In this document: positions 22,779-33,152 of the stretch, in pieces
Position numbering within the stretch: position 1 is the first letter of the stretch
Layout: the number at the start of each line of letters is the position of its first letter
Source: Vitrella brassicaformis CCMP3155
Lineage: Eukaryota > Protista > Chromerida
Assembly: GCA_001179505.1 (NCBI GenBank)
Contig: CDMY01000467.1
Span: 7,041-71,040, forward strand
Reading direction: 5' to 3'
Length of the DNA stretch: 64,000 nt
The notes under the pieces: model-generated
Seen by the model: only the letters and a program-made list of their open reading frames with translations
The model's database searches: none
Told to the model about the DNA's origin: nothing
Position numbers and translations under genes: made by a program

Positions 22779-23642
22779 TTACATGCTCCAAAGCTGAACG
22801 CGCTCGTACTGTTTTTTCTTCAAAACCAGAAAAATTTGGGCCAAGGTTATGCCCACACAAAATATGAACAGCCCCACTAAACGATTTTTCTTCTGGAGCA
22901 CGATACCAGCTTCTGATTGCCCAAAGCCTCCTATATTCGGATCTAGTGTAAGAGGCTGGTCAACTTTCACTAGCTGTCCCTTAGACACTGCTAGATCGAT
23001 GCCCCGAGGCACCTTTTGTGTCAACGTATCTCCACTGCCAGTTTTTAAGCTTATGACACACTCACCGTTAGGCTTTCGCTGAACATCAGTAATCTCCCCA
23101 TTGGCTGGAGCAGTAACCAAGTTGTTGTTGGTTTTGTCCCCGTTAGGATTCACTTGACCACGACCGCGATTGGCTCCTACGTAAATGGTGTATTTTTGCC
23201 CCAGTGCGTCGTCTGAAGGCGACACAACAGGGAAGTAGAGTTCACGGTTGGCTTCTCCGTAGACCGGCCCCACAACTAAAATGTTATCCGCCTCTGGCCC
23301 ATATGGAATGACAGAGTTTGAAAAACGTGCATCCTTTGGTGTACGGTCGGCGGGCGCCAGCTTAAAACCTTCCGGCAAAATAACCACGGCACCTACGCCT
23401 ACAGGCCCTTTCGACCCATCGCCCAACAGCTGTTCTGCGTTTTGGGGATAAGGAACCGTAACTTTCACTGCGAAGCTAGAGTCTGGAAAAACCGCCTGTA
23501 CAGTCTCCACTTCTACGGGCTTGGCAGCTAGGTGACAGTTGGCGCACACGATTCGTCCATTAGCTTCGCGTGGATTGGCGTAAGCTTGTTGTGCATAAAT
23601 AGGAAATGACAAGTCAAAGTTCACACTCATGGTCATAGCCAA
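22779..23642 (-). CDS. petA: Cytochrome f (leader very short)
   Basis: FPIYAQQ..NPREANGRIVCANCHLA, GNRGRGQ-like motif, PNIGGFGQ, C-terminal KKKQYERVQ. Confidence 0.96.
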   Translation of the reverse strand: MAMTMSVNFDLSFPIYAQQAYANPREANGRIVCANCHLAAKPVEVETVQAVFPDSSFAVKVTVPYPQNAEQLLGDGSKGPVGVGAVVILPEGFKLAPADRTPKDARFSNSVIPYGPEADNILVVGPVYGEANRELYFPVVSPSDDALGQKYTIYVGANRGRGQVNPNGDKTNNNLVTAPANGEITDVQRKPNGECVISLKTGSGDTLTQKVPRGIDLAVSKGQLVKVDQPLTLDPNIGGFGQSEAGIVLQKKNRLVGLFIFCVGITLAQIFLVLKKKQYERVQLWSM

Positions 23643-31611: not shown

Positions 31612-31755
31612 TTATCTGAAGGAGAAGGCTGCTTGCCAAAGAAAAGCCAGTAGTAGGAACAAAACAGGGACCGCAGGCAAGACATCGATGACCGGAGCCA
31701 TGAATTGGTAAGTTTCTGGAAGTTTGCACAAAACTTCAAAAAGGCTTGAATTCAT
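31612..31755 (-). CDS. psbK: Photosystem II protein K
   Basis: Hand translation ...[37 protein letters not shown]. Confidence 0.95.
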
Positions 31756-31857: not shown

Positions 31858-31965
31858 TTACAGCCCGTTGCGCCCCCATACGGTGAGAGCGATTGACATA
31901 GCGGTAACCGCACACAGCAAAGCCCACCCAAGCATAACTTCAGAAGGCATTCCAAGATCCTCCAT
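31858..31965 (-). CDS. petN: Cytochrome b6f subunit VIII
   Basis: Hand translation ...MLGWALLCAVTAMSIALTVWGRNGL. Confidence 0.92.
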   Translation of the reverse strand: MEDLGMPSEVMLGWALLCAVTAMSIALTVWGRNGL

Positions 31966-32032
31966 TTGCCTAAAATTAAAAGCCGTTAGAGGTTCTTCGC
32001 ACCGAGACTAGTGGCGTCTGGACCTGTTACTG

Positions 32033-32605
32033 TTAGTTAAGAAAATTAAAAACTTTGGTCGATTCCGAAGAATTGGGCCTGGTTTTTAGAACATATCGAA
32101 TGGCGTAGATTCCTCCTAGAACAGCGAGTGAGCCGGTGGTTAAAAAGGCGTAGCTTACAATCATCATGCTCACATGGACACTTAGCCAAGGAGCTCGGAG
32201 ACTTTGAGGAGGCCCATTTGACTGTTGCATAGCCACAGGAAGAGCCGAGTCTACGAACAGTAAAACTCCTCCTAACAAAATCGTGATTCCCAGAGCCAGC
32301 CAAGGGCTAATTCTTTTGAGGCGTGACGTCGGTCCTAACACTAGCAAGTTCAGCGCACAAATAAGCAGAGCTAGTACACAAAACGATTCGTAGAGACTAG
32401 CCAGAGGGACAGTGTGGTACCACACGCACCTTAAAAGAAACCAAACCAAAAAACATTCCAAAAGAACCCACAGGCAAAAACGGCTAGTCACAGAAAAGAC
32501 TTTAGAACATTTTAGCCAGGGCGCCAGGGTAAACCCGGCTAGTTGTGCCAGAAACGACATGTTGGTAAAAGCTAGCCAAGACTGTGTCATCCAACTGTAG
32601 CCCAT
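32033..32605 (-). CDS. ccsA: Cytochrome c biogenesis protein CcsA, N-terminal half only
   Basis: HTVPLASLYES (cf. H.PLSNLYES), LRAPWLSVHVSMMIVSY (cf. LQS.WLMMHVS.M..SY); no WWD domain. Confidence 0.82.
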   Translation of the reverse strand: MGYSWMTQSWLAFTNMSFLAQLAGFTLAPWLKCSKVFSVTSRFCLWVLLECFLVWFLLRCVWYHTVPLASLYESFCVLALLICALNLLVLGPTSRLKRISPWLALGITILLGGVLLFVDSALPVAMQQSNGPPQSLRAPWLSVHVSMMIVSYAFLTTGSLAVLGGIYAIRYVLKTRPNSSESTKVFNFLN

Positions 32606-32678: not shown

Positions 32679-33152
32679 TTAATAATAAACCTTCCCCCCT
32701 CCCCACTTTTCTGAAACTAACTTCGGCTGTAACAAGATATGCCCGGCTATAGCAAACAAGTCGTCTTCTGTCAGATTACGCATTTTTGGAAATATATCAG
32801 CGTTCGTGACGTTGGGATGAAGTTCTGATAAAGATTCCACTCCATCATAGCTTTTAGGGTCCTTCATATAATTAATCAAGGCTTCAATATTGTCTCTACG
32901 TGGCTGAGCGCCTTTTAGAGCTGTGAGGTCTAGACCAACGTTTTGGTTGGTCTTCGTTACGCCTCCGGTATGGCAAGTGCTGCAAGAAGCGTTAAATAAG
33001 CGCTTCCCCCGTTTGACCTGCTCTAGAGTAAGGGTAACGGAACGTCCCGCCTCATTTAAGGGTATGGTTAAAGCCTCGGAGTCAAGCTCTTTACTTAGTT
33101 TCCATTGATAGTCGAATACCTGGGGCCCGTTTAGTAAGACGTTCTCTAACAT
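32679..33152 (-). CDS. psbV: Cytochrome c550
   Basis: GKRLFNASCSTCHTGGVTKTN, EKWGGGKVYY. Confidence 0.96.
   Translation of the reverse strand: MLENVLLNGPQVFDYQWKLSKELDSEALTIPLNEAGRSVTLTLEQVKRGKRLFNASCSTCHTGGVTKTNQNVGLDLTALKGAQPRRDNIEALINYMKDPKSYDGVESLSELHPNVTNADIFPKMRNLTEDDLFAIAGHILLQPKLVSEKWGGGKVYY

What the first reader, a model, noticed from the sequence alone, without database searches (positions are those of the whole stretch)
31966..32605. ccsA encodes only the N-terminal half: split gene or remodelled heme-attachment system
Seen: the ORF stops after 190 aa (TAA CAG TAA), and petN begins 67 nt later, so there is no room for the rest. No WGxxWxWDxKE (WWD) motif was recognised anywhere in the window. 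Established: CcsA (~300-320 aa) needs the WWD domain and its flanking His to present heme. Both substrates (PetA CANCH, PsbV CSTCH) are intact here. Inference: the C-terminal half is a separate gene elsewhere (plastid or nucleus), like split ccmF in plant mitochondria or split psaA/atpB in Chromera.
Basis: partly seen in the sequence, partly recalled or inferred. Interest (0 to 1): 0.72.

Follow-up and report, generated by a model that had tools for sequence, protein, structure and literature searches.

The report
CcsA split between plastid and nucleus
In the alga Vitrella brassicaformis, the chloroplast protein that attaches heme to c-type cytochromes is encoded in two pieces, the front half in the chloroplast genome and the back half in an intron-bearing nuclear gene, a rare case of an organelle gene moved to the nucleus only in part.

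Summary
Window 32033-32605 (-) is a 190-aa ORF that matches only the N-terminal half of CcsA. It ends in TAA CAG TAA, and petN starts 67 nt later. No WWD-coding sequence exists in any frame of the plastid DNA.

The missing half is a nuclear gene on contig C404 of the same assembly (Vitrella brassicaformis CCMP3155).
- It has four exons and three GT..AG introns, which are spliced out in transcript contigs of three runs but kept in a DNA run.
- Its 227-aa product has a signal-peptide-plus-transit-like leader, the WWD motif, and the two C-terminal conserved histidines.

The two products cover positions 4-126 and 141-252 of the 252-position CcsA model without overlap. The break lies in the variable stromal loop.

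The half-size plastid ORF is old and under selection. Nine relatives (52-94% identity) are all 177-190 aa, eight in the same gene order, with dN/dS 0.09-0.34.

Chromera velia expresses the same kind of nuclear C-half-only protein (Cvel_17213).

I found no paper describing this. The scan had already noted the nuclear half (s1-199335), and this report adds the plastid half.

The parts
32033..32605 (-). ccsA-N: plastid ORF for the N-terminal half of CcsA (190 aa plus stop). It has five predicted membrane helices, the PLASLYES motif, and the P-His1 motif PWLSVHVSMM (His144).
   Evidence: PF01578 positions 2-97/212; TIGR03144 positions 4-126/252. His144 and its flanks are invariant in 10 sequences; five helices; best Foldseek rank is CcsBA 7s9z, which is weak.
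32027..32035 (-). Double in-frame stop, TAA CAG TAA, that ends ccsA-N.
   Evidence: Relatives end at different codons (TAA, TAG or TGA) within the same loop.
31966..32032 (-). 67-nt spacer between ccsA-N and petN, which leaves no room for a C-terminal half.
   Evidence: In eight relatives the petN C-terminal motif lies 132-174 nt after the stop.
31858..31965 (-). petN (35 aa), next gene in the same transcription unit.
   Evidence: C-terminal ...TVWGRNGL; synteny.
31612..31755 (-). psbK (47 aa), 3' end of the reported rps14-psbV-ccsA-psbK transcript.
   Evidence: PMC3894158.
32679..33152 (-). psbV (cytochrome c550), a substrate of the heme-attachment system, with CSTCH at 32984.
22779..23642 (-). 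petA (cytochrome f), a substrate, with CANCH at 23546.

Best explanation
CcsA, the WWD-domain subunit of the System II cytochrome c synthase, is made in Vitrella brassicaformis as two separate polypeptides encoded in two genomes.

The plastid gene (window 32033-32605, minus strand) makes CcsA-N. This piece has five membrane helices and carries the first lumenal heme-ligand histidine (P-His1, His144).

A nuclear four-exon gene (G000:C404:82748-83762, product P0001, 227 aa) makes CcsA-C. It starts with a signal peptide followed by Phe and a basic, Ser/Pro/Arg-rich transit-like stretch. An acidic linker follows that corresponds to the variable stromal loop. The rest is three membrane helices carrying the WWD heme-binding motif, TM-His2 (His181) and P-His2 (His219).

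Shown here: both genes exist, each holds exactly the part the other lacks, the nuclear one is spliced and expressed, and the plastid one is conserved under purifying selection.

Inferred: CcsA-C is imported across the plastid membranes and inserts into the thylakoid from the stroma. There it pairs with CcsA-N and the plastid-encoded Ccs1. The external heme site is then formed with one axial histidine from each chain, and it attaches heme to cytochrome f, c550 and other lumenal c-type cytochromes.

The break sits in a stromal loop whose length varies widely among CcsA proteins, so both new ends face the stroma. Chromera velia has the same nuclear C-half-only gene, so the fission and partial transfer probably predate the split of the two chromerid lineages.
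For: Complementarity:
- TIGR03144 (252 positions) is covered 4-126 by the plastid ORF and 141-252 by P0001.
- Pfam PF01578 is covered 2-97 and 124-212.
- In alignment A2 with seven full-length CcsA proteins, the plastid ORF aligns up to the helix after WLxxHV. P0001:100-227 aligns from the LDxxSYR region to the C-terminus.

Conserved residues:
- P0001 aligns to CcsBA 7s9y residues 809-900 with both histidines conserved.
- The histidine roles are described in PMC6299221.

Nuclear nature and expression:
- Three GT..AG joints appear in contigs of runs X1, X2 and X8 (two studies). DNA run X4 keeps the introns.
- The public 227-aa model is identical to the spliced product.
- There is an in-frame stop upstream of the ATG. 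CDS GC is 0.615, against 0.461 for the plastid ORF.

No other copy: the whole-assembly six-frame HMM search gave only these two loci.

Selection on the half-size ORF:
- Nine relatives (52-94% identity) are all 177-190 aa.
- The eight relatives whose contigs were fetched keep psbV upstream and petN downstream.
- dN/dS is 0.09-0.34 in unsaturated pairs, and pN is 0.2-0.3 against pS 0.75-0.9 in the rest.
- The plastid ccsA is transcribed, and no RNA editing was seen in chromerid plastids (PMC3894158).

Partner: ccs1 sits on a small plastid contig followed by trnN.

Chromera: P0155 (Cvel_17213, 255 aa) has a leader with signal peptide plus Phe and covers only TIGR03144 165-252. It is 43% identical to P0001. 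Its transcripts have upstream in-frame stops.
Against:
- The leader was judged by eye against the known rule for red-lineage complex plastids, not by a predictor.
- The N-half is very divergent. It has no sequence hit to solved structures even as a profile. Its AlphaFold model has low confidence (pLDDT 60.7), and the CcsBA match ranks first but is not significant (E 0.24).
- No nuclear C-half was found for the nine environmental relatives.
- The tree cannot place the C-half because of long branches. An origin from the plastid gene rather than from a foreign CcsA is therefore only the parsimonious reading.
- I could not read the Chromera plastid ccsA.
Confidence: 0.84

Rival explanations
1. The plastid ORF is a decaying remnant (pseudogene), and the nuclear protein does the job alone or with an unrelated partner.
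For: The ORF is highly divergent from canonical CcsA: Pfam scores only 32 bits and there is no PDB sequence hit.
Against: Ten lineages keep an intact 177-190 aa ORF at up to about 48% protein divergence, with saturated synonymous sites and dN/dS 0.09-0.34. P-His1 and its flanks are invariant. The gene is transcribed. The nuclear protein lacks P-His1 and five of the eight helices.
Confidence: 0.04
2. Both halves are functional but no longer work together. For example, the N-half has taken on another membrane role, and the C-half pairs with Ccs1 only.
For: No interaction evidence was obtained. Both halves are fast-evolving.
Against: The external heme site of System II needs P-His1 and P-His2 on opposite faces of the heme (PMC6299221). 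Here they sit on different chains and both are strictly kept. The two pieces cover the family model end to end without overlap.
Confidence: 0.08
3. The truncation is an assembly artefact or mis-join at the ccsA-petN junction.
For: I could not lay reads on window 32033, because the single read-laying run went to the nuclear locus.
Against: Eight independent contigs from other assemblies and runs show the same short ORF followed directly by petN. No WWD-coding DNA exists in any plastid piece. The nuclear gene encodes exactly the missing part.
Confidence: 0.01
4. The two halves are joined at the RNA level (trans-splicing) into one CcsA.
For: None here.
Against: The C-half mRNA is a nuclear, spliceosomally spliced transcript with its own start codon, an upstream in-frame stop and an import leader. 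The N-half ORF ends in a double stop inside a polycistronic plastid transcript.
Confidence: 0.01

Closest known systems
Canonical plastid and cyanobacterial CcsA (System II cytochrome c synthase subunit; Pfam PF01578, TIGR03144)
   Same: Same family and same conserved elements: PxxNLYES-like motif, WLxxHV (P-His1), WWD motif, TM-His2 and GxHSYG (P-His2). Eight predicted helices in total, with a Ccs1 partner in the plastid.
   Different: One polypeptide of about 300-350 aa in all described plastids and cyanobacteria. Here there are two polypeptides (190 aa, and about 130 aa mature), and the second is nuclear-encoded and imported.
Helicobacter hepaticus CcsBA (PDB 7s9y/7s9z)
   Same: P0001 residues 132-222 align to residues 809-900 with the WWD and both histidines conserved. 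The N-half model's best fold rank is 7s9z (weak).
   Different: CcsBA is the opposite extreme: CcsB and CcsA fused into one chain.
ccmF split into ccmFN/ccmFC in plant mitochondria (System I WWD protein; from my own knowledge)
   Same: A WWD-family heme lyase subunit encoded as separate pieces that are assumed to assemble.
   Different: All ccmF pieces stay in the mitochondrial genome, and the system is System I, not System II.
Organelle genes transferred 'in pieces': cox2a/cox2b in chlorophycean algae (Scenedesmus: cox2a mitochondrial, cox2b nuclear) and in apicomplexans and dinoflagellates; rpl2 in flowering plants (from my own knowledge)
   Same: Fission of an organelle gene, with one half moved to the nucleus and imported to rejoin its partner.
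   Different: Those are mitochondrial genes. Here it is a plastid gene for a polytopic thylakoid protein, imported into a four-membrane plastid.
Split psaA and atpB of the Chromera velia plastid (PMC3894158, citing Janouskovec 2013)
   Same: The same algal group tolerates plastid genes broken into separately translated fragments.
   Different: Both fragments of psaA and atpB remain in the plastid genome.

Membership tests
CcsA (System II cytochrome c synthase subunit, PF01578 / TIGR03144) | Match to the family model over its whole length | tested here: met
   Met only by the two products together: TIGR03144 positions 4-126 (plastid, 52.9 bits) plus 141-252 (P0001, 130 bits). The sum of about 183 bits is just under the single-chain cut-off of 187.6. 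PF01578 covers 2-97 plus 124-212.
CcsA (System II) | WWD heme-handling motif WGxxWxWDxKE | tested here: met
   WGAFWSWDPKE lies in nuclear exon 3. It is absent from all plastid DNA.
CcsA (System II) | P-His1 upstream of the WWD (WLxxHV) | tested here: met
   His144 of the plastid ORF, in PWLSVHVSMM, is invariant in 10 sequences and aligns with WLxMHV of seven full-length CcsA proteins.
CcsA (System II) | TM-His2 and P-His2 downstream of the WWD | tested here: met
   His181 and His219 of P0001 align with the two histidines of CcsBA 7s9y. The roles come from PMC6299221.
CcsA (System II) | Single polytopic polypeptide | tested here: not met
   There are two genes on different contigs and in different genomes. 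This is the variant feature.
CcsA (System II) | Ccs1/CcsB partner present | tested here: met
   A 370-aa ORF on the 4.3-kb plastid contig C14 matches PF05140 ResB (35.4 bits, cut-off 24.6) and is followed by trnN(GUU), as published.
CcsA (System II) | Heme attachment activity and physical assembly of the parts | not testable with these tools
No biochemical data.
Organelle gene fission with partial transfer to the nucleus | The transferred piece has nuclear gene features and is expressed | tested here: met
   Three GT..AG introns are removed in contigs of three runs and kept in a DNA run. GC is 0.615 against 0.461. The contig is 85,560 bases.
Organelle gene fission with partial transfer to the nucleus | The transferred piece carries an organelle-targeting leader | tested here: inconclusive
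   There is a hydrophobic N-terminus (residues 1-20), then Phe and a basic Ser/Pro/Arg-rich stretch. Chromera's P0155 has the same layout. It fits the known signal-peptide-plus-Phe rule, but no predictor or localisation test was run.
Organelle gene fission with partial transfer to the nucleus | The retained piece stays functional | tested here: met
   dN/dS is 0.09-0.34, and ORF length is conserved in 10 lineages. It is transcribed.

The most novel reading that the evidence does not exclude
The split is only one part of a wider rebuilding of lumenal c-type cytochrome maturation in vitrellid plastids. The synthase is bigenomic, and both plastid-encoded substrates (cytochrome f and c550) lack a recognisable hydrophobic thylakoid signal peptide. 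Substrate delivery to the heme-attachment site, and not only the gene layout, would then differ from all described chloroplasts. The fission itself would be an ancestral trait of the chromerid-apicomplexan lineage, and the first documented plastid gene transferred to the nucleus in pieces.
Probability: 0.15. Interest if true: 0.85.

Novelty: new variant of a known kind. Interest (0 to 1): 0.66.

Why it matters
- **Gene retention in organelles.** This case bears on why some genes stay in organelles. A polytopic thylakoid protein was cut in a loop, and its three-helix half was moved to the nucleus while the five-helix half stayed. That allows a within-protein test of the hydrophobicity/import and redox-control explanations for gene retention.
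- **A natural cut site.** It shows a split site that CcsA tolerates, which places the two axial heme ligands of the external site on different chains. This is useful for dissecting heme hand-over in System II.
- **Annotation.** The plastid 'ccsA' of Vitrella, and probably of Chromera, is a half gene. The nuclear 'unnamed protein product' and Cvel_17213 are its other half.
- **Dating.** If Chromera's plastid gene is likewise half-size, the event dates to before the chromerid radiation, on the line leading to apicomplexan parasites.

Tried and rejected
This gives no verdict, and I did not try to pair the chains with any other tool.
- **PDB sequence search for the N-half**, alone and as a 10-sequence profile: no CcsBA hit.
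- **AlphaFold on the N-half family:** low confidence (pLDDT 60.7). Foldseek ranks CcsBA 7s9z first and CcmF third, but at E 0.24-0.5, so this is weak support only.
- **Origin of the C-half:** a tree of 172 WWD domains left P0001 on a 2.3-unit branch joined to Chromera's 5.6-unit branch (SH-aLRT 91, long-branch warning). Its placement relative to the cyanobacterial/plastid type is unresolved. The best full-length phmmer hits are of that type, but the WWD core resembles some other bacteria.
- **Nuclear C-half of the environmental vitrellid relatives:** none found, by word search with exon 3 in two length windows or by the exhaustive search. Short C-half-like hits there (P0042, P0043 and others) are canonical CcsA fragments.
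- **Chromera plastid ccsA:** The metagenome scan with the N-half profile gave two vitrellid contigs and one ordinary full-length bacterial CcsA.
- **Spliced model:** searched exon by exon by reference. After that I used the public protein P0001, which is identical to the joined exons.
- **Literature:** seven searches found no description of a split ccsA. The 2010 PNAS plastid-genome paper is not held.

Full report
**1. The observation**

The window is G000:C467:7041-71040 of a 72.7-Mb, 1064-contig assembly. A protein search later identified the organism as Vitrella brassicaformis CCMP3155. C467 is plastid DNA: it carries the rRNA operon, tRNAs and photosystem genes, and its GC is about 0.45.

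- The ORF at 32033..32605 (-) is 190 aa.
- On the minus strand it ends TAA-CAG-TAA. The petN ATG is at 31965, so the spacer is 67 nt.
- Pfam PF01578 matches only model positions 2-97 of 212 (32 bits, cut-off 29.9).
- The CcsA equivalog model TIGR03144 matches positions 4-126 of 252 (E 4e-14).
- A six-frame regex and a six-frame HMM search found no WWD-coding sequence in the window or in the other plastid pieces.
- PetA (CANCH) and PsbV (CSTCH) are intact.

**2. Where the other half is**

The whole-assembly search with PF01578 gave only two loci. One is the plastid ORF. The other is on contig C404, at 83330-83494 (model 126-177, E 5e-18) and 83637-83735 (model 180-212).

Reading that locus (L001 = C404:81830-84994) shows the following:
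- an ATG at L001 919;
- a frame containing WGAFWSWDPKE followed by ...AAYIH;
- in another frame, ...QWGMHSYGFIIPE followed by a stop.

**3. Splicing and expression of the nuclear gene**

I laid contigs of four public runs on L001:600-2400.
- Three runs from two studies (X1, X2, X8) carry GT..AG joints that skip 1066-1131 and 1669-1816.
- They have only 9 letters where the genome has 126 (1383-1508), which fits a third intron at 1390-1506.
- The DNA run X4 runs unspliced through these places.

The exons are L001 919-1065, 1132-1389, 1507-1668 and 1817-1933. On C404 these are 82748-82894, 82961-83218, 83336-83497 and 83646-83762. Together they give 227 aa.

The public model P0001 ('unnamed protein product [Vitrella brassicaformis CCMP3155]', 227 aa, on an 85,560-base contig) is identical to this product. 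There is an in-frame stop upstream of the ATG. CDS GC is 0.615, against 0.461 for the plastid ORF. This is therefore a genuine expressed nuclear gene, not a stray copy of plastid DNA.

**4. The two products are complementary**

- P0001 matches TIGR03144 positions 141-252 (130 bits) and PF01578 positions 124-212. The plastid product covers 4-126 and 2-97.
- In an alignment with seven full-length CcsA proteins (A2), the plastid product aligns from the N-terminus through the WLxxHV motif and the helix after it.
- In the same alignment, P0001:100-227 aligns from the LDxxSYR region to the C-terminus.
- The gap between them is the loop whose length varies from about 10 to more than 100 residues among the references.
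- P0001 residues 132-222 align to H. hepaticus CcsBA (7s9y residues 809-900), with the WWD and both downstream histidines conserved.

According to PMC6299221, P-His1 and P-His2 flank the WWD and ligate the externally bound heme from opposite faces, and TM-His2 belongs to the membrane heme site. Here P-His1 (His144) is plastid-encoded, while TM-His2 (His181) and P-His2 (His219) are nuclear-encoded.

Hydropathy and the AlphaFold secondary structure give five helices in CcsA-N. Hydropathy alone gives two clear helices plus one weaker one in CcsA-C. The charge distribution puts the C-terminal tail of CcsA-N and the mature N-terminus of CcsA-C on the stromal side (topology is inference). A stroma-imported C-half could therefore insert without any unusual step.

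**5. The leader**

P0001 begins with a hydrophobic stretch (residues 1-20) ending ...MVGA. Phe follows, then a stretch rich in Pro, Ser and Arg with no acidic residues. This is the layout known for proteins sent to red-lineage complex plastids (established knowledge; no predictor was run). An acidic, low-complexity linker follows, up to the first helix.

**6. The half-size plastid gene is old and selected**

- A word-based search found nine relatives at 52-94% identity, all 177-190 aa (alignment A1).
- The eight relatives whose contigs were fetched, from NCBI assemblies, ENA and Logan, keep psbV upstream. The longer of these contigs also show psbB and rps14.
- In all eight, the petN motif lies 132-174 nt after the stop, and there is no WWD or GxHSY motif in any frame.
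- The stop codons differ and the tails vary, but every ORF ends in the same loop.
- Nei-Gojobori dN/dS is 0.09-0.34 where synonymous sites are not saturated. Elsewhere pN is 0.2-0.3 against pS 0.75-0.9.
- PLASLYESFC, PPQSLRAPWL and HVSMMI are invariant.
- PMC3894158 reports the plastid ccsA inside a polyuridylylated rps14-psbV-ccsA-psbK transcript, and found no RNA editing in chromerid plastids.

These results exclude an assembly artefact and a decaying pseudogene.

**7. Chromera**

The exhaustive phmmer search with P0001 found only itself below 1e-30. The next hits are ordinary CcsA C-halves at about 42-46% identity.

One hit, P0155, is Chromera velia Cvel_17213 (UniRef A0A0G4FJ33, 255 aa).
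- It has a signal peptide ending ...VSDA, then Phe and a basic transit-like stretch.
- It covers only TIGR03144 positions 165-252.
- It is 43% identical to P0001 over 115 residues.
- It is encoded without interruption on 16 transcript-like contigs that have in-frame stops upstream.
- In the WWD-domain tree it pairs with P0001 (SH-aLRT 91), but both branches are long.

Table S2 of PMC3894158 lists a polyuridylylated plastid ccsA for C. velia as well. I could not read that gene, so whether it is also a half gene remains the key open point for dating the event.

**8. The partner**

ccs1 is a 370-aa ORF on the 4.3-kb plastid contig C14. It matches ResB (35.4 bits) and is followed by trnN(GUU), as published.

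**9. Mechanism and its limits**

The best reading is a bigenomic, two-chain CcsA that assembles with Ccs1 in the thylakoid.

- *Shown:* the two genes exist, they are exactly complementary, the nuclear half is spliced and expressed, the plastid half is under selection, and the same arrangement of the nuclear half occurs in Chromera.
- *Inferred:* import, topology, assembly and activity.

The evolutionary source of the C-half is not resolved by the tree. Transfer of a piece of the plastid gene is only the parsimonious reading.

**10. Novelty**

The proteins and the plastid 'ccsA' annotation are public, but seven full-text searches found no description of the split. Non-open papers could not be checked.

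This scan had already noted the nuclear half on its own contig (s1-199335), and that report could not read the plastid half. I found the nuclear locus independently before seeing that note. This report supplies the plastid half, its conservation and the exact fit.

Mitochondrial precedents exist for transfer in pieces (cox2, rpl2; my own knowledge). I know of none for a plastid gene.

Noticed in passing
L005 5907-6725 (-) = G000:C467:5907-6725, just before the window start: A 272-aa ORF for a truncated phosphonopyruvate decarboxylase (TIGR03297, 308.8 bits, model positions 21-262/360). It lies in the 23S-16S spacer of the plastid rRNA operon, on the same strand, in a high-GC stretch. That spacer normally holds trnI and trnA. 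The scan also noted this as s1-235873.
   Followed up: partly
window 23585-23642 (-), 5' end of petA: Upstream of the mature-type cytochrome f N-terminus (FPIYAQQ...) the frame offers only about 10-12 residues (MTMSVNFDLS) after a stop. None of them forms a hydrophobic core, so there is no recognisable thylakoid signal peptide.
   Followed up: partly
window 33075-33152 (-), 5' end of psbV: The PsbV ORF has about 27 non-hydrophobic residues before the conserved LTIPLNEAG start of the mature-type protein, again with no obvious signal peptide. With petA, this means both plastid-encoded substrates of the heme-attachment system look unusual.
   Followed up: no
L005 149-628 (+) and L004 1366-2478 (+): A SecA wing/scaffold-domain ORF on C467 and the ccs1 ORF on C14 both end with the same residues (...KDVSLCLD), directly before trnN(GUU). 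The inverted-repeat border seems to lie inside the 3' ends of two different genes.
   Followed up: partly
L006, L008, L009, L010, L013 (NCBI assemblies GCA_029976185.1, GCA_029980125.1, GCA_029979655.1, GCA_013332595.1): Several public assemblies hold Vitrella-like plastid contigs of up to 40 kb with the same gene order as the window. One assembly holds two different lineages (P0034 at 78% and P0040 at 61% identity). There is unsampled vitrellid diversity in these samples.
   Followed up: partly
L001 600-858: A separate transcript contig ends at about L001 856-858, roughly 60 nt upstream of where the CcsA-C transcript contigs start (917). It is probably a close neighbouring gene.
   Followed up: no
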